Assembly: GCA_964036045.1 (NCBI GenBank)
Contig: OZ038378.1
Coordinates: 156,612,001-156,676,000 of the forward strand
Length of the DNA: 64,000 bases
Direction of reading: 5' to 3'
DNA from: Eutreptiella sp. 'Long Island Sound 2002'
Taxonomy: Eukaryota > Protista > Euglenida
The translations under genes and the position numbers were made by a program. Numbering within the stretch: position 1 is the stretch's first letter; every line of letters begins with the position of its first letter. Positions 1 to 16,406 of this stretch are shown here, in pieces. The notes below the pieces were generated by a model that saw only the letters and a list, made by a program, of their open reading frames with translations, searched no databases and was not told the origin of the DNA.

Positions 1-1
1 A

Positions 2-680
2 GCATACCACTAGCCCAACCCCATCCAACATCTCGCCCGCGTGCTCGGCGACACAGACAGCCGGGCACACATCCAGGAGCTCCAGGAGAAACTGCAAATC
101 CCCCTCTACCACTCAGCACTGCGCCCGGCAAACGTCCCAGCCCACCTCCAAAAACGACGCATCCGGCTCCTCAGAGAGCAACTACCATTCCTCACCAGGG
201 TCGCCAGATAGCTCGCCCGCAAGCACATCCACGTCCAAGAAGAACACACCCGTTGCCCGTGCGACCACACCACCCCGGAGGACTGGGAACACTTCAAGAA
301 ATGCCCCCTCCATGCAGGCAGGGACACGCTAGTGGGTTGGTCCCCGGCAGAAACCCTACGACAACACGAAGGCTGGCCAACCCACAGCCACGCACACCAG
401 GCCACCGAACACCTCTTCCGGGATCCCCTGGTCAAGGAAGCCACCATGAGAGGGGCGGTGACATAGGCCCTACACCGACACCTCACCAAACACACGGAAA
501 GCCCCATGGAGGCAGCACCGCACCTCCAGCTAGAAGCAGTCCGCAGAGCGGCGGCCCAAATGGTACACCGCAAACACCTTCTGTTAACACACGCGGAACA
601 ACTCACCGACCCCACCGCCAGAGAACACATGCAGCGTCTCATCCATTACCATGCCGTGCATGACCCAGACGTCCACTAAC
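2..680 (+). pseudogene. C-terminal part of a non-LTR retrotransposon ORF2 (CCHC zinc finger region), disrupted
   Basis: The frame starting at nt 2 reads ...HTRCPCDHTTPEDWEHFKKCPLH..., a C-x-C-x8-H-x3-C motif like the post-RT zinc finger of LINEs. In-frame TAG at 11-13, 209-211 and 464-466; terminal TAA at 678-680. The RT core would lie upstream of the window. Confidence 0.7.
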
Positions 681-3184
681 CCACTCCGCGCCCCGCACAC
701 GCCCCCCATCTCCATCCGCAGGCCTCCAAGACACCACCACAACGCCCCAAAGCCCACCTCTCACCCAAGAAGCCACCCGGCACCGCCCAACCCGGTCGAG
801 CCCAACCAGGGCCAACCATACGTCGACGTGGACGCGCAAAACCCCGGCAACCCACCCAGCCCACCCCCCCCGGACCCGGGGCACCCCCCCCTCACACCGG
901 CCACCATCCGCGACCCCGACCTCCTCCGAGCGACCCTCCAAGGCAGGGCCCCGACCACTCCCCTGGGCTGGTACCGCCTACAAGAGGACTTGACCAAGCT
1001 CACCGTCAAAGCCCTCCGGGACCTGACCACCCAAGGCAACGGCCTCCACGAGGCCATCGTAGACCTCGTACTCTGGCGAGCCCAGAAACACACCCAGGGC
1101 TAGCACGTCTGGATTCCCCCCATCGAGTGGGGCCAGGCCCACACGACACCGACATCAACGTCACACGTCGAGGGACCATACGCCTACGACGGGCCCCAGC
1201 GGAGAAGGACCACCCAGCGGACCCGAACCACCCGGAGCAGTGGGAACAGGCCACCGCACCAAGCCGCGACACCGCCCTCCACGCCGCCGGCCTCCGCACC
1301 CCAGACGACGACCTCCCTCCCCCACCTACAGACAGTGACCACCCCCCGCCGGAGATCTGTTGTACAGTCCTCGAGCGCGGGCACTACTACGTGGTAGCCG
1401 CTACAGCTACGTCCCCCGGCCCACAATGGCTCAACAAAGGGACAGACACCATGCTCGCCCCAGGGGCCGCCCCACCAGGGGCAGTAGGGGACCCCACCAC
1501 CCCGCACAGGGTCCTCAGGGGCGTCCTCCAGCCGGGGGACAAGCCCCCAGCCCGCGCCCCGGCCCAAGTCACCTCAGGGAAGGCGGGCTACCACCTAGGA
1601 CTAGCCATGCTCTGCCTGACCCACTGGATCCAGCGCCGCTGGCCATCCACGGGGACCGTTCCCTGGATTTGGGCCATCCCCACCGCCCACACACAAATCG
1701 AGGCGGGCCCGGACACGCGGCCAAACCCCCCCCCCAGACCACAGCACTCCCTCACCTGCGGGTACCACGCCATCCACAGGGTCCTCAGCCGCGTGGGTCT
1801 TAGCCCAGAGCTAGCATACCCCCTTCCCACCACTGACCAAGAGGTCCACCAGATACGCAAGCTCATCTGCGAAATCCTTGCCGCGGCAGCAGAAGACGGC
1901 AAGCTTCTCCTCCAAACCGCCCGGCCTACAACTGACCACGCAAGCGCGCCGCTGCGAGCGGACACATACACCGACACAGCACACCCCACCGCGCAATCCC
2001 CGCCCATGCCCCTCCCCCCTCGCTGCTCACCCGGAGACCCACACTCGCCCACCAACGCGCGCACCCCCGGGCCCCGCAACACGGGCCTCCCCCACCCGCC
2101 CGAACACCAGCACACGCCCGCCACAGACCCACCCGCCAGACACCCCTCACCACCCCCCACACTCGACAGCCCGCACACACCCACCGAGGGGAGCCCCGCG
2201 CCCCGCGGCACGCCCACCCCACCCAGTGGCCCGCACACGCCCCCCGCGCACACCCCAGAAGACCCAGGCCCACCCCCCCCCGGCCCCCGAATGCAGCCCA
2301 CGCGAACTGTTCCCCCCCGCGGACGCCAACCCACGCAACCGATTGTCGTGCAGGGCAACCGATTGTACTACACATTGCAGGACCCCGGCCCAGCCAAGCC
2401 CGGAAGGAGAAGGCCACAGCCCCGCGCCTCCCTCCCCCGCCGCTGCCGACCAGATCGGCCCGCCGGGCCGCCAGGTCACGACCGGGCCCCCCCAGCCGCC
2501 CGCCCCCAACCTACAGCCCGAGGACATGCCCTCCATCCTCCCCGCCGTGGCCGCAGCAGAAGCCGCCACCCACAAGCCCGCGACCGCCCGCATCACAGCC
2601 CAACCCGCGTCCACCACCTCCTCCTCATCCTCAGCCTCATCAACCTCCTCCACCTCATCCTCCGACCCCCCCCTCCCCGCCGCCCTCATCCACAAGGCGA
2701 CGGCAAAAGCCAAAGCCGCGGCCGCACGCACCGACCCCCCGACCCCCACACAAGCGACCCCTCCCCCCCCCCGGGCCCCCGCCCACCTCGCCTGGTGGTC
2801 TGCCCCCGCGTTGCAGGAGCTCCGCCGCTGGGTGAAGTGGGCCGGGGGAGCGGGAAGGCGAGAAGGGGTGCACATGGTGCACACCTCCGAGGAGGTGCGC
2901 ACCCGCACCTCCGCCGACCCCAACGAGGCCGCCCCGGAGGCCATCATGCCGCAAGCGGCATGGGAGGCCCTCCTCCGCGACGCGGTCTAGGGCCTCCGCC
3001 CCCCCTACACCCCCCAAACCCTCCGCCAATGGCTCCACGCCACCCACCCCCAGGCCTGGGCCATCGGCGCCCCCCCCCCCCACCCCACCACCACCACACC
3101 GGGAAGGGGAAGGGCACGGGCAAGGGGAGGGCAAGGGACGGCAAGGGACACTCAGGCAAGGGGGCACCGAGGGGCCCCAAGTGA
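651..3184 (+). pseudogene. Ulp1/SENP-like (clan CE, C48) cysteine protease ORF of the same element, with Pro-rich C-terminal extension; disrupted
   Basis: Motifs in Ulp1 order: GLHEAIVDLVL (cf. WLNDxII); ICCTVLERGHYYVV (His at 1382-1384); GTDTML (Asp at 1445-1447); PQHSLTCGYH (Gln at 1743-1745, Cys at 1757-1759). TAG at 1101-1103 and 2988-2990, frameshifts near 1135 and in the 2.3-2.5 kb region. Confidence 0.65.
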
Positions 3185-5400
3185 GGGGCAGGCGCCCATA
3201 GGGACAGGGCACCGAAAGCGACACAACGTGGGGGCAGGAAACCACCCAAGGACCAGGAAGGGACAGGAGCGGGGACCGAGGCACAGAGGAAGAGGACACC
3301 ACGGCAGGCGCCACGACCCACACCCAGGAAGGACATACCACGGCGGAGGGACCAGCGCCGCCCCACCCCCAACGAACGCCGCACGACTCCCGGGGACGCA
3401 CACCCCCAACAACGCCGAAGCAAGAGTCGGACGCCGTACGGATCACACCAGCGCACACCAACCAGCCACCCGAAACCACACGGGGGATGGAGGGCACACC
3501 TACACGGGGGGAACAGGCTACACCCACAGAGGAAGCCACAGGGAACACCGCCGCGCGGCGCAACACCACGCCCTCACCGCCAGACGACGACCCCGGCCGC
3601 CACAAGGGCCACCACACAGGCACCGGAAGAGGACGACGGCACGGCCACAGCACCCAGGGCTAGGGACCGGGACCCCCAGGGGACACGGGACCAAGGCACA
3701 GGCCCCCAGGGAGGGCAACCCCACGGACACCTACCCGACCCACCAGCCCGAGCGGCACGCCCAGGCCCCCGCAGCACGGACCCAGCGAGCCACCCACACC
3801 TAACCGCACCCCCCAGCCACCAGCCAGCCACACACCGACCCGCACTCCACACCACGACACAGGCCAGGCTAACCTCCACCGACCCACCAAGGCACAACAC
3901 GAGACAGCACGGCACACCGCACCGCAGCGCGCCACAGTGCAACGCACCACGACAATGCACCCCAAAGCGCAACACGCCACAGCACGACGCGGCGCGACGC
4001 GGCACAGAGCGGCACAACACGGCACGGCAGACCCTAACCTGAAGGACTAACCAAGACAAGCCACCGCACACCCCGGAAGGCGCCGCACCAGCACGCCACA
4101 CACCGGCACCGCTGGCCACACACGGGGCCACCGCGTGCCCAGCAACAAAGGTGGCGGTCCACCCAGAAGGTTAAAACCGGCACCGCGGAGGAGAAAGGAC
4201 ACGGACAACCCCAGCCCCCTAACCCAGAGCCACACGAAGCCCCCTGGCGCAGCTGCCCAGCCGGCAGAGCCAGGACCTAACCCGGCAGGAAGGGGCGCCG
4301 AGCCCAACGTGTACATAACCCACCTGACCCATGGGCCCGGGACACGGCCAAGCAGAACGCAACCGCCAACAGCAACCCGGAAGACCACACAGAATGCGGG
4401 CCAGTGCGTGCGCCAGCCCAGGGAAGGCGGAGGGAGGAACAGGCAGACCCCCCCCCAAAAAAAAACAGGGGGGGAGGGGGGGGGGCGAGAGGAAGGCCCA
4501 CAGCCACCAAACCGCCCGCCAACACCACAAGGGGCGGCCAAACCCCCCACCCGGAAGGCACCGAAGACAGGACCCCCAAAGGGGCACAGGGGGACCACCC
4601 AGCCAAAGCCGGCAACACCAAACCAGGAGCAGCGGCCCACCGGGGGAAGGGACACCCAAAACGCGCAGACACACACCACGCTGGGACGAAAAAAAAAAAG
4701 AGCCAGCAACCCAGCCCGAAAGAGAGGGGATGGGGGGACAGGGACCACAAGGCCCGGGACAGGCACAACCAGCGACCAACACCACAAAGCCAAAGCAGAA
4801 CACGCAAAAAAAAAAACACACACAACCCGACAACCCAACCAAGAAGAGCGGGGCACAACCGAGACCCAGGCCCAGCACGCACGCCCACACAGCACACCCC
4901 AACCAGAAAAGGCGGGGAACAAGCAGGGCGCGCGCACAAACACGCACCCCCGCACAGCACCCCCAACCAGGAGGTGCACGAAACCACGCGGGACGGGCGC
5001 ACGAGCACACACACACCCCGACGCCCCCCCAAGGAGTGGCGGGGCGCAGCCGAAACCTAGACCCCAGCACGCACGCCCACACCGCACACCGGAACCGGAA
5101 ACGGCGGGGTGTAGGCGGAGCGCGCACGCAACCACGCGCGTCCCATATCCGCAACCACGACAGGTGGGGTGCAGTCCGAAACCCAAGCCCAACCACGAAC
5201 GCCACAAACCCCAGCCGGCAAAAGAGGGACGACACCACAAACCGCACCAAAACACACCCGCCCAAGACCCCAGCCAGGACTGGCAGGGTTACCGAAACCC
5301 ACAGCCAACCGCAACCCAGACCCAAACACAAGCACCACACAACAGTAGGAAACCCAGTGTCCAAAGCCCGGGCACTGAGGCAGCCCGTGCCATGCAGCTG
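3185..5400 (+). repeat. C/A-rich low-complexity tract with short internal repeats
   Basis: Extreme C/A skew. CCCAGCACGCACGCCCACAC recurs at about 4870 and about 5062. The long ORFs called on both strands here are compositional artefacts. Confidence 0.6.
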
Positions 5401-5911
5401 ACCCGGCCAAACGAGATCCGGAGCCCGGGGGTAAGGCTGCATCCTAAGGCCTGCGCTGCTTTGGGACTCGAGGCGGAGCGTGCGACACCCAAGCGCCTCG
5501 GAACCCTAGTACCAAGAACTTGCATGCATGCCTTGGGAACGGGATACGCCAGGAAGTCCGGTGAACCTCTAGGGTTCCGCCCAAAGGAGGGGACTTGCGC
5601 AAGCACGGGGGCACACCCTCCCGGCGAGACAAGCACGTCACGCCGGCGGCGATCAGCCCTCCCGGTGTTGCCCGGGGCCGCTTTGTTGGGGTGCAGTACG
5701 ACGCTTGATACTTGGCGCATCGCATGTACCTGTCAGCAGGCTAGCACAAAACACAGGCAGCACCCGTCAAGCAAGAAGAAGAACCTAACCCGTCCACGGC
5801 CATCCACCCCGGGTACCTGTCGAGTCTAGAACAAAAAAGAAAGAGCAGTAGGGAGAAAAGTGGCCAACGGGAGGGAGATATCTATGGACGATGTCGCCAC
5901 ACCCACCTGTT

Positions 5912-5985
5912 ATGAGCCCCAGGATTCGAACCTACCCACAGGAACCAAGACCGGGGTGACTGTCCACTATAGTGCCACGACGATG
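5912..5985 (-). other. Degenerate tRNA-derived (SINE head-like) sequence
   Basis: The minus strand has an A-box-like TGGCACTATAGTGG (5963-5976) and a B-box GGTTCGAATCC (5922-5932). No complete cloverleaf. Confidence 0.45.
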
Positions 5986-6587
5986 GCTTACAAGCGTGCC
6001 CCTCTGTATCCCCCACAAATGACCTGTTGAAGGAAACTGTCACGACCAAGAAATAAGAGCGGGGCCGTTGGCGCCGTCACCTCCACGGTGGGCATCGAAC
6101 GTACGCCCTCCGGGACGAAGCCCCCGTGCACTTCCATTAAGCTACGCTACCGATGTGGTATAAAAACCCGCAACCAAGACCACCAGCTGTTAATGAAGCA
6201 AAACACTACCGGTGCCAAATGTGTACCCTCTACCTCTACACCAAGAGCAACAACTGTGCATGGGGCGGCCGGCACCGTCGCCTCCACGGTTCGCGACGGG
6301 CCGCGAGGACGGAGCGCACTGCGGGGCTGGGCCCCCGTGCACTTTCAGGTATGCTTGTACCGGCGTGTAAACATGGATAAACACATTGCCTAGATACTTA
6401 GCCTGTGCAAAAAGACGATTCGGGAATGGACCGTTCGGTGGATCTATATCCTCACCGGGGTTGGAACCACCCCATGTGGGATTGGGGACGAGTGTGCTAC
6501 CAACTACACCAAGTATTCTACGTCTCCCTATGGTCGGTTTTGGACGCCAGAAAAAGCCTGCTGACAATCTTGAGATAGTATAGCGGT

Positions 6588-7330
6588 CTAGGAAAAATCT
6601 CTTTCACTACAAGAGGTCGAAGGGCTTCGGTTCCAACCCCTGCCGAGGGCCTCCTCTGGGGCAGGAGAAGCAGTCTGGGCCCCTAAAAATTCGCGCTCGC
6701 TGCAGGACGTCGAGGGACTTCGCCTGCCATCCCCTGTGTATGCTGTGGACATACCAAAGGCAGCCGCAGGGGCTTCCGACATATCAGAAAAGACAGTGAC
6801 AGTGGATGCGCTCGAGTGCTGGCTGTGTGTTGACTCCACGCTCCTTGGGATTTCTGGCATCTCAGTAAGACCCAGGTCCTGCCACACATCACTCACAGGA
6901 TCATCACCGGGAACAATATCGGGAGCGCCCTCTCTGGCCCTCTCGGAATCGACACACTGCTCAAAATTAAGCACGGTTGGTCGTGGTGGGGACACCTCCC
7001 GCGATGGGGAGCGCCGGGCGGCCACTTAGCATGTTCTTTTGACTCTCTGTCTCGCTGGGTGAACCTTGGGGGTCTTGCGGGCTAGGTATAGGGGGTTGCT
7101 AAGTCTACCATTGTTGGCCAATGTGTCGGCCTGTTCGTTGCCTTCTACATTCACATGGGAGGGGACTTTTACCCACAGGATGTCTTGGAAGGTGGAATCA
7201 AGATGCTGTAACAGTTCTTTCCGGAGTTGGACGTTAGACACCGGTCCTGCCGACCCCACCCAACCTCTCGCCTGCCACCTCAAAGCTGCCCCTTGTGCCC
7301 CTTTACGGACATATTCGGAATCGTGCAAGT
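6588..7330 (-). pseudogene. LINE 3' remnant: RNase H C-terminal half plus acidic tail
   Basis: Reads DSEYVRKG...RWQARGW...VSNVQLRKELL...ILWVKVPSHVNVEGNEQADTLA (RNase HI motifs), then VWQDLGLTEMPE, matching WEELGLEEM of the LINE at 35.9-40.5 kb. Confidence 0.75.
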
Positions 7331-14550: not shown

Positions 14551-15063
14551 CCAAATAGGGTGAAAAACACATAAAGAGGGGCTAAAACATGCTTTACATA
14601 GGATATTTGATCATTTTGGATGGTCAAAGTATCAAAAAAATCAGTTTCGGAAATTTCCATTTTCGAGCTGCCAAGGCTGGAAAACTGCATCAGCAGGTTG
14701 TGCCCTAGACCCCTTGGGAGCCCCCCCGTGCGGTGACACGTGGGTGTGTCAAGTGGTGATTGGGCTCTGGGAGATCACGCAAGCAACAGCATGCACAGCC
14801 AAAAAGAGATCAAGGCTGATCACGAACCGGAATGTCCGGTCCTAGGCGCCTTTCGCCAATGTCTGTGGAGAACAGCGACACCGCGGACCTGTAGCATATG
14901 CACAGTGGATGCCCGCTCAGACTGGGCCAGCCATGCCATGAACACGCTGGAGTAGTGTCGCTTACAAGAAAAAAATCAGACGTTGGCGTCTCTTTTAAAA
15001 GAACGAAACCAGCACAACATCTCAGTCCTGACCCCCTCCCCCGCCCCCCTTTGGTGTGGGGGG

Positions 15064-16406
15064 CTACTCCGCCCAAATGGACCAGTCAGCACACCAATCA
15101 GTGTGGCCGTCCTCATGTGGTATATGCCAAGAGGCATACTGGTGCCCGTGCCACACTGCATATTTCTGAAGCCACTGGCGCAGACAATACCGGACATGAC
15201 TGTCCGAACAGGGCATGTGGTGTGCAATACATGTGACCCACCGCTTGCTAAGAGAAACGTCATGTGGTGTGTGACTCAGTAAACGATGTAAAGCATGCTG
15301 GCAAGCCCGGACAGCCACACCCTTGGGGTGTTCACACAGCAGGCTGACTTGTAGCCATGCTGAAGCAGACAGGAGGTAATCGCCCCAAGAGGACAAGAAC
15401 CGACGGTAGTTCATTAACACACCTGTAAACAGGTTGGTCAGGCTGGTCTCATTAACAGCCGATGCAGACTGTAAAGGGGCACCATGTTTCAAATTCCAGC
15501 TTGCATCAAGGGCAGAGGGGTGCACGCACACAGTGCCACAGGACCCATGTCGGCTAGCCGCAAGCCCCAGCGCATACAAGGTACTGCCCATGCACTGGCG
15601 CAAGCAGTCTTGGTTGGTGTCAGTAATGCAAGGACACAGCACCCGCAGCGACCAAGCAGTCGCCAACAACCTACAGACATCCGCCATGGCCCATGTTGCA
15701 CCGACCCCTACAGCGGCTACCAATATGTTATCTCTGAACTGTGCCAAAGACACAATGCGCCCATTTTGATTCTTCCATATGGGGAATCCCCTGGCAGTGA
15801 ATGATAACTCACCCAGCTCGTAAAAACGTTGCTTATTCAAATGAAATTTCCAAATGCTATGTAGGTTGCTGCTTGAGCGCTGAACGGGCCTCCCATCGGT
15901 AAAGCAAAGGCACGGGACCAACATTGTCCGACAGCGACACAAAATCTGTCTTCCTGCAGGCAAAAACGGATCATGCTGGTCAATTCTTCATGGCTGATCA
16001 CGTCAAAATTATACGCATTCGCTTTCCCGCATCTATCCAAGCATTTATCATACTTATGTATCGACCAAAACATCTGGGTGGCTCGCCACTGACGTTCATT
16101 CCGCAGCCACTGGGTAGCATCGTCTAGATGCTGTAGTACATCCCTGGGCAAGATGCGGTTAAACTGATCTTTGCAGTCAGCTTCACCGATCACAGTGCAG
16201 CCCCAACTGTTCAAGTCATCAAGCCACCCCGCAACATCTTGAATGGACAGGTGTAAGAAGCAGCCAGTAACCTCTTTGCTGAGGAACCGCAAAAAACAGG
16301 TGAAAGCTCGCGCCGCAATGCGCAAGCGCCAACGAGGTACGGCTGGGGCACAGCTAGCACATATAGGACGCCACGTAATTGCAGGCAGCCCCCCCCCCCC
16401 AAACAC
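15064..16406 (-). pseudogene. Penelope-like reverse transcriptase (unit 4), frameshifted after motif B
   Basis: GGTCCGCTGCT of units 1-3 is GGTTGCTGCT at about 15865 (net 1-nt loss), splitting the ORF. Could be a real mutation or a read error. Confidence 0.75.

What the first reader, a model, noticed from the sequence alone, without database searches (positions are those of the whole stretch)
2..3184. LINE-like element with a separate Ulp1/SENP-type protease ORF downstream of the RT zinc finger
Seen: the retroelement zinc-finger ORF ends at 680. A second same-strand ORF overlaps its last codons and has His/Asp/Gln/Cys motifs in clan-CE order. Established: Ulp1-like domains occur N-terminal of the RT in NeSL and in some DNA transposons (Mutator-like), and SUMOylation acts in transposon silencing in animals. 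Inference: a 3' ORF encoding a deSUMOylase/deubiquitinase on a LINE is an arrangement I do not recognise and could be an anti-silencing cargo. This copy is dead (stops, frameshifts).
Basis: partly seen in the sequence, partly recalled or inferred. Interest (0 to 1): 0.75.

Follow-up and report, generated by a model that had tools for sequence, protein, structure and literature searches.

The report
Euglena LINE with protease-like third gene
This stretch is a broken copy of a very abundant jumping gene (a LINE) of a Euglena-type alga; it carries a real, conserved extra gene after its reverse-transcriptase gene that probably encodes a very unusual SUMO/ubiquitin-type cysteine protease, though no statistical test yet proves that identity.

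Summary
Window 1-5691 is the 3' part of a 5'-truncated, decayed copy of an L1-like LINE with more than 3000 candidate copies in this 2.28-Gb genome. ORF2 (APE-like, RT, RNase-H-like motifs, CCHC knuckle) stops at 677-679. A third ORF starts at ATG 651, overlaps it by 29 nt, and is one open frame of about 1350 aa in intact copies.

The ORF belongs to the LINE: the junction is contiguous in all 40 scored copies, and copies with different 5' ends share one 3' end.

Its N-terminal domain (window 888-1933) is under purifying selection. It recurs at 25-31% identity in two other huge families of this genome. His, Asp, Gln and Cys are invariant across families, in clan-CE order.

Clan-CE identity is not proven. 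Pfam, PDB profile searches and hhalign against ElaD find nothing. Both AlphaFold models are poor (pLDDT about 42). SENP8, Ulp1 and SENP1 appear only among weak fold matches (Z 3.7-4.2). A language-model search points to Peptidase_C48 for two families.

The anti-silencing role is speculation. The scan had already noted this family on other DNA (s1-199748, s1-228076) and left the protease identity open.

The parts
1..679 (+). C-terminal remnant of LINE ORF2, downstream of the RNase-H-like region. It carries in-frame stops at 11-13, 209-211 and 464-466; the natural stop is TAA 677-679. The copy itself begins about 900 nt before the window.
   Evidence: 93% identical to ORF2 aa 456-680 of intact copy B
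254..313 (+). CCHC-type zinc knuckle (C-x-C-x10-H-x3-C, followed by another His) at the end of ORF2
   Evidence: read from the sequence; conserved in copies A and B
651..3184 (+). ORF3. In intact copies it is one frame of about 1350 aa from this ATG. Here it is broken by TAG 1101-1103, a 4-nt deletion near 1140, a 1-nt insertion at 2273, a deletion of about 1.53 kb near 2757, TAG 2988-2990 and a 2-nt insertion at 3070. The family stop is TGA 3182-3184.
888..1933 (+). Conserved protease-like domain of ORF3 (350 aa in intact copies). Cross-family invariant residues: His 1382-1384, Asp 1445-1447, Cys 1613-1615, Gln 1694-1696 and Cys 1757-1759.
   Evidence: selection; conservation; C48 neighbours; weak C48 fold matches
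1934..2757 (+). Pro/Thr/His-rich low-complexity part of ORF3. No sign of selection in the tested part.
   Evidence: 23/71 shared changes synonymous, expected 29%
2757..2757 (+). Deletion junction. About 1.53 kb of the family sequence (copy B 14696-16229) is missing here. In intact copies that stretch includes Arg/Ser-rich tandem repeats of ORF3.
2784..3065 (+). Conserved C-terminal segment of ORF3 (AHLAWWSAPALQELRRW...), 91% identical to copy B
3185..5691 (+). T-poor 3' region of the LINE with no recognisable coding features. Homology to the family stops at 5691, 136 nt short of the family's ...GAGTGCACC(TACC)n 3' end.

Best explanation
Window 1-5691 is the 3' part of a dead, 5'-truncated copy of a giant (at least 15 kb), very abundant L1-like LINE of a Euglena-type alga. 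The element has three ORFs. ORF1 is at least 1231 aa. ORF2 holds an APE-like region, RT, RNase-H-like motifs and a CCHC knuckle. ORF3 overlaps the ORF2 stop by 29 nt, one base forward in frame.

The N-terminal 350-aa domain of ORF3 is a real, selected protein domain. Most likely it is a very divergent clan-CE (Ulp1/SENP-like) cysteine isopeptidase. Its proposed active site is His167, Asp188 and Cys292, with Gln271 as the oxyanion residue. Its core runs strand (His), strand (Asp), helix, strand, Gln loop, helix starting at Cys. An unusual insertion of about 15 residues, Pro-rich in the window's family, separates Gln from Cys.

Shown: the ORF exists, is linked to the LINE, is selected and is conserved across families. 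Inferred: the fold, the catalytic role of the residues, and the function. The function could be removal of SUMO/ubiquitin-like modifiers to protect the element's RNP or escape silencing, or cleavage of the element's own large proteins. How ORF3 is translated (reinitiation at ATG 651, a frameshift of one base forward, or internal spliced-leader addition) is unknown.
For: LINE identity:
- RVT_1 at E 2e-14.
- Human L1 ORF2p at E 5e-11.
- Exo_endo_phos at E 0.04 at the ORF2 N-terminus.
- Different 5' truncation points with one shared 3' end that finishes in (TACC)n.

Linkage to the LINE:
- Of the 40 scored copies, 37 match window 1-2000 in full and the other three from base 1 to at least 1583, so all span the ORF2/ORF3 junction.
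- ORF3 is one open frame in copies A, B and C.
- The ATG is kept in 18 of 19 copies.
- 7 of 18 distinct copies are intact from the ATG to the end of the domain.

Selection:
- Substitutions shared by two or more copies are 44/99 synonymous in the domain. The expectation is 28%, and the other two frames give 26% and 21%.
- The ORF2 control gives 60/116.
- Singleton changes are neutral, at 28%.

Conservation:
- HMMER against 1.84 billion representatives finds two further families, each with more than 10,000 candidate copies in this genome, at 25-31% identity.
- 44 columns are invariant across the families. They include H167, D188, C244, Q271 and C292.

Clan-CE leads:
- The language-model search puts Peptidase_C48 clusters first (0.93) for the window family, and at ranks 2 and 3 (0.89) for family 3.
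- Both AlphaFold models give the Ulp1 order of elements, with His at a strand start and Cys at a helix start.
- In a Foldseek-independent search of 48,161 chains, SENP8 (Z 4.2), a Ulp1-like protease (Z 3.7) and SENP1 (Z 3.7) rank 2, 5 and 8.
- Ulp1, SENP5, SnCE1, RickCE and RavZ recur among Foldseek's weak hits.
- The ends of the aligned ranges place Gln259 of family 3 at or near the oxyanion Gln of Ulp1 and SENP5. This uses those enzymes' residue numbers from my memory and assumes no gaps near the ends of the ranges.
Against: - No Pfam hit (E up to 10) for any of the 21 members tested.
- No PDB hit by phmmer or by profile.
- PF02902 scanned over the whole genome finds 55 candidates. No listed match lies at any place listed for these families or in the DNA I hold.
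- hhalign against E. coli ElaD gives 0.1% probability.
- Both AlphaFold models are low-confidence (pLDDT 42.7 and 41.8). All fold matches have Z below 5 or E above 0.2, and GNAT folds score as well as C48.
- The conserved Gln is 21 residues before the Cys, not about 6 as in C48.
- A second invariant Cys (C244) is unexplained.
- No expression or activity data exist.

In mitigation, Pfam also misses the RNase-H-like region and barely sees the APE of this same element. HMM blindness is therefore general for this T-poor element.
Confidence: 0.55

Rival explanations
1. ORF3 is a genuine, selected LINE gene, but its conserved domain is not a clan-CE protease. It would be another alpha/beta fold, such as a GNAT-like acyltransferase, or a new fold. 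The invariant His, Asp, Gln and Cys residues would serve another chemistry, metal binding or structure.
For: All sequence-profile tests for C48 are negative. The best weak fold matches are mostly GNAT domains: Elp3 at Z 4.7 plus many at Z 3.3-3.8. The conserved G-x-A motif before the long helix (YQGLGRA in family 3) resembles GNAT motif A. That comparison comes from my reading and my memory of the motif. The Gln-to-Cys spacing does not fit C48.
Against: The language-model search returns Peptidase_C48 clusters, and no listed hit carries an acetyltransferase family, for two families only 29% identical. GNATs are far more numerous in the PDB than C48 enzymes, so three C48 chains in the top eight of 48,161 is more surprising. 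GNATs have no invariant His/Asp/Cys set. The motif-A-like Q/R is not kept in families 1 and 2.
Confidence: 0.3
2. The domain is a clan-CE protease, but its job is maturation of the element's own giant proteins, like adenain, poxvirus I7 or ASFV pS273R, rather than removal of host SUMO or ubiquitin marks.
For: The element encodes unusually large products: ORF1 of at least 1231 aa, ORF2 of about 1780 aa and ORF3 of about 1350 aa. Established knowledge of clan CE is that its viral members process polyproteins at Gly-Gly-X sites.
Against: No cleavage sites were sought or found. LINE proteins are not known to need processing. The other cysteine proteases carried by LINEs (Ulp1 in NeSL/Utopia, Josephin in Dualen) belong to families whose cellular members remove ubiquitin-like modifiers (PMC4640811, PMC9977147).
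Confidence: 0.15
3. The protease-like ORF belongs to a different mobile element that merely abuts, or is inserted next to, this LINE.
For: Nothing positive.
Against: All 40 scored copies span the ORF2/ORF3 junction without a break. The ORF3 start overlaps the ORF2 stop. Copies truncated at four different 5' positions all continue through ORF3 to the same (TACC)n 3' end, about 6.5 kb downstream of ORF2.
Confidence: 0.02
4. The ORF is a by-product of composition (T-poor strand, few stop codons) and codes for nothing.
For: Long ORFs occur in all six frames of this element. The Pro-rich middle of ORF3 shows no selection.
Against: There is an excess of synonymous shared changes only in the ORF3 frame of the domain. 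Protein-level homology at 25-31% identity exists with two other families, with E down to 1e-8 and conserved motifs.
Confidence: 0.03

Closest known systems
NeSL and Utopia non-LTR retrotransposons (Ulp1-like protease domain)
   Same: A LINE that carries a Ulp1/C48-type cysteine protease as an accessory domain (PMC4640811).
   Different: In NeSL and Utopia the domain is recognisably Ulp1-like, N-terminal, and fused in the single ORF of an RLE-type element. Here it is downstream, in a separate overlapping third ORF of an APE-type L1-like element, and it is too divergent for any HMM.
Dualen/RandI LINEs of Chlamydomonas (Josephin-related cysteine protease)
   Same: A LINE with APE, RT and RNase H whose coding capacity includes a cysteine protease of the deubiquitinase type (PMC9977147). 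From memory, Kojima and Fujiwara 2005 is the original description.
   Different: A different protease clan (Josephin, with Cys before His). Dualen also has an RLE. I did not check the protease's position or ORF arrangement in Dualen.
Cellular and effector clan-CE peptidases (Ulp1, SENP1/5/8, ElaD, RickCE, SnCE1)
   Same: The His-Asp-Gln-Cys order, a His-to-Asp spacing of about 20 residues, the predicted strand/strand/helix/strand/helix core, and recurrence among the weak fold matches.
   Different: No significant sequence or profile similarity. The Gln lies 21 residues before the Cys rather than about 6, and about 40 extra residues sit between Asp and the following helix. There is an additional invariant Cys.
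Human LINE-1 ORF2p
   Same: ORF2 of this family aligns with the L1 ORF2p RT region at E 5e-11. It has an APE-like N-terminus and a C-terminal Cys/His knuckle.
   Different: The Euglena element adds RNase-H-like motifs, a giant ORF1, a third ORF and a 3' region of about 2.5 kb ending in (TACC)n rather than poly(A).

Membership tests
Non-LTR retrotransposon (LINE), APE-type, L1-like | Reverse transcriptase domain of the LINE type | tested here: met
   RVT_1 at E 2e-14 and 54 bits, above the cut-off. Human L1 ORF2p at E 5e-11.
Non-LTR retrotransposon (LINE), APE-type, L1-like | N-terminal apurinic-endonuclease-like domain | tested here: inconclusive
   Exo_endo_phos at E 0.041 and 14 bits, below the cut-off, but at the expected place.
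Non-LTR retrotransposon (LINE), APE-type, L1-like | Variable 5' truncation with a common 3' end and a simple-repeat tail | tested here: met
   Four copies start at different points and end at the same ...GAGTGCACC(TACC)n.
Non-LTR retrotransposon (LINE), APE-type, L1-like | Target-site duplications | not tested
   Flanks were printed but not analysed. No obvious duplication was seen by eye.
Peptidase family C48 (Ulp1/SENP), clan CE | Match to the family profile (Pfam PF02902) at or above its threshold | tested here: not met
   No hit at E up to 10 for 21 members of three families. The genome-wide PF02902 scan does not pick these families. PDB profile searches are empty. hhalign against ElaD gives 0.1% probability.
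Peptidase family C48 (Ulp1/SENP), clan CE | Catalytic residues in the order His, Asp (or Glu/Asn), Gln, Cys | tested here: met
   H167, D188, Q271 and C292 are each the majority residue in all three families, at 83-100% within each family.
Peptidase family C48 (Ulp1/SENP), clan CE | Oxyanion Gln a few (about 6) residues before the nucleophile Cys | tested here: not met
   The conserved Gln is 21 residues before the Cys, with an insertion between them that is Pro-rich in the window's family. The Gln 5 residues before the Cys in the window family is not conserved.
Peptidase family C48 (Ulp1/SENP), clan CE | Papain-like clan-CE fold with His on a strand and Cys at the start of a helix | tested here: inconclusive
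   The order of secondary-structure elements fits. The models have pLDDT of about 42. The C48 matches are only Z 2.5-4.2 or Foldseek E about 0.8.
Peptidase family C48 (Ulp1/SENP), clan CE | Cysteine-dependent cleavage of SUMO/ubiquitin-like conjugates | not testable with these tools
   Needs a biochemical assay.

The most novel reading that the evidence does not exclude
At least three hugely abundant repeat lineages of Euglena, together tens of thousands of copies, carry a previously unrecognised and extremely divergent branch of clan-CE isopeptidases. Only the window's lineage is shown here to be a LINE, where the domain sits in a separate third ORF. In this branch a loop of about 15 residues is inserted between the oxyanion Gln and the catalytic Cys. 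The enzyme would strip SUMO/ubiquitin-type marks to keep the elements active in a heavily methylated 2.3-Gb genome that is largely made of them.
Probability: 0.3. Interest if true: 0.75.

Novelty: new variant of a known kind. Interest (0 to 1): 0.5.

Why it matters
LINEs rarely carry enzymes beyond the endonuclease, RT and RNase H. The few that carry ubiquitin/SUMO-pathway proteases (NeSL, Utopia, Dualen) suggest that retroelements tamper with host protein-modification systems, but none has been tested.

Here a protease-like gene is kept under selection as a separate third ORF in the window's LINE, and the same domain recurs in two other families. Together these families make up a visible share of a 2.3-Gb genome. 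That gives an abundant natural system with many intact copies to clone from, in which the question can be asked directly: does a LINE-encoded isopeptidase counter silencing?

It is also a caution for annotation. On this T-poor element, standard HMMs miss even its RNase H and nearly miss its endonuclease. 'No Pfam hit' therefore means little here.

Tried and rejected
Searches that found nothing:
- Pfam on the window pieces and on intact copies.
- PDB sequence and profile searches. The only outputs were chance hits to BOP1 and to P-II.
- hhalign of the 125-sequence alignment against E. coli ElaD, at 0.1% probability.

Structure work that was not usable:
- Two AlphaFold runs, on family 1 with 21 sequences and on family 3 with 125 sequences. 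Both were low-confidence.
- Foldseek against the PDB and the viral library, and VIA-align searches. Nothing was significant.

Searches for divergent relatives:
- The word-based protein search returned only decayed copies from assemblies of the same species.
- No relative outside this organism was found.

Limits on tools and data:
- I fetched loci at places named in earlier notes (s1-195417, s1-210115, s1-203109). They turned out not to be this family. Only a diverged relative lacking its post-RT region was in reach.
I therefore could not fetch a full-length copy, the flanks of families 2 and 3, or the multi-copy true-C48 ORFs.

Ideas rejected:
- Hypermutation of this one copy as the cause of the A+C richness: every copy shares it.
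- ORF length as evidence of coding.
- An independent abutting element.

Method note: a majority-rule reference of 3.6 kb was computed inside a script, only to polarise substitutions. It was not printed.
Full report
**What the window holds.** The first 6 kb of the window are strongly strand-skewed. GC is 64-72%, and T makes up only a few per cent of the + strand. This is a property of the whole repeat family, not of this copy. Its consequence is that stop codons are rare in all six frames, so long ORFs appear on both strands. ORF length is therefore no evidence of coding here.

**Family size and genome.** A DNA search of the window's own genome (2.28 Gb, called Euglena or a euglenid alga in earlier notes of this scan) with window 1-2000 gave 3010 first-look candidates. 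Forty of them were scored, at 93-96% identity. Thirty-seven cover the query end to end, and the other three cover it from base 1 to at least 1583.

**It is a LINE.**
- Four copies with 20 kb of context start at different points and end at the same place...GAGTGCACC followed by a short (TACC)n tract. These are A on C20, B on C20, C on C6, and W, the window's own copy.
- The window copy begins about 900 nt before the window. It loses homology at 5691, 136 nt short of that 3' end.
- A longer copy lying in reverse next to copy C gave the upstream part of the element. It has an ORF of at least 1231 aa with no Pfam match. After it comes an ORF2 whose first 1134 aa contain a weak Exo_endo_phos match (E 0.04), RVT_1 (E 2e-14) and similarity to human LINE-1 ORF2p (E 5e-11).
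- The C-terminal 680 aa of ORF2 show RNase-H-like Asp/Glu/Asp/His..Asp motifs by eye, which Pfam does not detect.
- ORF2 ends at TAA 677-679.

**The downstream ORF.** ATG 651 opens a frame one base forward of ORF2 and overlaps it by 29 nt.
- In copies A, B and C this frame stays open for 1024-1358 codons.
- In the window it is broken by TAG 1101-1103, a 4-nt deletion near 1140, a 1-nt insertion at 2273, a deletion of about 1.53 kb near 2757, TAG 2988-2990 and a 2-nt insertion at 3070. The 1.53-kb deletion removes Arg/Ser-rich tandem repeats.
- Among 18 distinct copies, 7 are intact from the ATG to the end of the conserved domain. The ATG is kept in 18 of 19 copies.
- All scored copies span the ORF2/ORF3 junction, and ORF3 lies about 2.5 kb inside the shared 3' end. 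ORF3 is therefore part of the LINE, not a neighbour.

**Is it coding?** I aligned 20 copies over 3.6 kb and separated substitutions private to one copy from those shared by two or more. Private changes reflect decay after insertion. Shared changes arose partly in active lineages.
- Private changes are 28% synonymous everywhere, which is the neutral expectation.
- Shared changes are 60/116 synonymous in the ORF2 control.
- Shared changes are 44/99 synonymous in the ORF3 domain. The expectation is 28%, and the two other frames give 26% and 21%.
- The Pro-rich linker and the low-complexity stretch after the domain show no excess (9/34 and 23/71).
- So the domain at window 888-1933 is a selected protein. 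The low-complexity parts are not shown to be.

**Relatives.**
- The word-based protein search found only decayed copies from assemblies of the same organism.
- An exhaustive HMMER search of 1.84 billion representatives found 129 proteins with no annotation. Every one I looked up (six) comes from ENA assemblies, and two of them recur at 100% identity in this genome.
- Among these hits are two clearly different families that are each enormously abundant here. Family 2 has 427-aa ORFs and 26,382 first-look candidates. Family 3 has a 341-aa ORF, one 90%-identity cluster of 484 members, and 10,658 candidates.
- They are 25-31% identical to the window's family.
- Across the three families 44 columns share the same majority residue. 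They include His167-Tyr168, Trp182, Asp188, Cys244, Trp248, Arg251, Trp263, Gln271 and Cys292, numbered on the 350-aa domain of copy B.
- I had picked the His, Asp and last Cys from one sequence, by analogy with Ulp1, before seeing the other families. All three proved invariant.
- The Gln I would have picked, 5 residues before the Cys, is not conserved. The conserved Gln is 21 residues before it.

**Is it a clan-CE protease? Formal tests are negative or inconclusive.**
- Pfam gives no hit at E up to 10 for 21 members.
- PDB sequence and profile searches give nothing.
- PF02902 scanned over the whole genome finds 55 candidates, including bona fide C48 genes. No listed match lies at any place listed for these families or in the DNA I hold.
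- hhalign against E. coli ElaD gives 0.1% probability. Its only aligned piece pairs the family's HY motif with ElaD's GGHW.
- Two AlphaFold runs gave mean pLDDT of 42.7 and 41.8, so fold searches cannot decide. Foldseek finds nothing below E 0.2, and VIA-align finds nothing above Z 4.7.

**Indirect evidence for clan CE.**
- The language-model feature search puts a Peptidase_C48-bearing cluster first (0.93) for the window's family, with ElaD further down. For family 3 it puts C48-bearing clusters at ranks 2 and 3 (0.89).
- Both models predict the same order of elements: strand, strand starting at His, strand ending at Asp, long helix, strand, loop with Gln, helix starting at Cys, helix. As I recall it, that is the order in the Ulp1 core.
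- In the Foldseek-independent search of 48,161 representative chains with the family-3 model, SENP8 (Z 4.2, rmsd 3.1, 71 residues), a Chaetomium Ulp1-like protease (Z 3.7) and SENP1 (Z 3.7) rank 2, 5 and 8. GNAT domains fill most of the rest of the list.
- Ulp1, SENP5, SnCE1, RickCE and RavZ also turn up among Foldseek's weak candidates.
- C48 chains are a very small fraction of the PDB (my estimate), so this recurrence is unlikely to be pure chance. However, the matches are not independent of each other, and none is significant.
- The same element's RNase-H-like region is invisible to Pfam and its APE reaches only 14 bits. HMM failure is therefore expected for these compositionally odd proteins.

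**Weighing it.**
- I put 0.55 on a very divergent clan-CE-like cysteine protease domain.
- I put 0.3 on a real domain of some other fold. A GNAT-like fold is the concrete alternative, given the structural hits and a G-x-A motif before the long helix.
- An independent abutting element and a non-coding artefact get a few per cent each.
- If it is a protease, its target is open.
- How ORF3 is translated is also open: reinitiation, a frameshift of one base forward within 588-679, or internal spliced-leader addition. Earlier notes of this scan report other Euglena LINEs that begin with the spliced leader, which I did not test.

**Comparison with what is known.**
- Ulp1-like domains are known at the N-terminus of the single ORF of NeSL and Utopia elements (PMC4640811).
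- Dualen LINEs of Chlamydomonas carry a Josephin-related cysteine protease together with APE, RT, RNase H and RLE (PMC9977147).
- Full-text searches found no report of a C48-like protease as a separate 3' ORF of an L1-like LINE, and none for Euglena.
- A 2026 preprint describes other enzymatic cargo (adenine and cytosine methyltransferases) on Euglena retroelements but does not mention a protease.
- I therefore rate this a new variant of a known kind.
- This scan had already met the same family on other DNA (s1-199748, s1-228076 and four unchecked notes) and left the protease identity unproven. The identity remains unproven.

Noticed in passing
window 1-5691; L025, L026 and L027 throughout: The whole LINE (at least 15 kb) has only 3-12% T on its coding strand. 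Stop codons are therefore rare in all six frames, and ORFs of 400-1400 aa appear on both strands by composition alone. The cause of this family-wide skew is unexplained.
   Followed up: partly
L026:5680-6187 (missing from the window at about 2757): ORF3 of intact copies contains Arg/Ser/Pro-rich tandem repeats (periods 51, 114 and 138 nt) that read like an SR/RS domain (RSRSPRRHR...). The window copy has lost them in a 1.53-kb deletion.
   Followed up: partly
G000:C1:84247907, C1:84303907, C1:197535377, C11:30342262, C598:20412; and C13:6.85-7.65 Mb: True Peptidase_C48 (PF02902) matches of about 31 bits lie inside a multi-copy ORF of 1182 aa, and in a tandem cluster on C13. These may be other mobile elements carrying a canonical Ulp1 domain. 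They could not be fetched.
   Followed up: no
L029:3000-5620 (C20:20094399-20097020): Copy A is truncated against a tandem satellite with a period of about 1045 bp. The satellite forms arrays at many places in the genome (C3:127.25 Mb, C4:13.1 Mb, C22:33.36 Mb and others).
   Followed up: no
L031:581-8536, minus strand (C1:84212581-84220536): A diverged relative of this LINE: ORF2 is 35-49% identical and ORF1 28%. A heavily truncated 3' fragment of the window's family is inserted in it at 6144-6951. Its post-RT region lies outside the fetched DNA.
   Followed up: partly
window 5900-5990: A tRNA-like stretch on the minus strand (GGTTCGAATCC T-arm motif) lies just after the LINE homology ends. 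ARAGORN calls no tRNA there, so it may be a decayed tRNA-derived SINE.
   Followed up: partly
L024:1510-2929 (C1:156601510-156602929), about 9-10.5 kb before the window: A second copy of the same LINE family lies just upstream of the window's copy. Another lies in reverse upstream of copy A.
   Followed up: no
protein P0107 (ENA assembly): A called ORF joins the RT (YIDD motif) of a different LINE to a frameshifted piece of this family's ORF3. It is probably a nested insertion, not a real fusion.
   Followed up: partly
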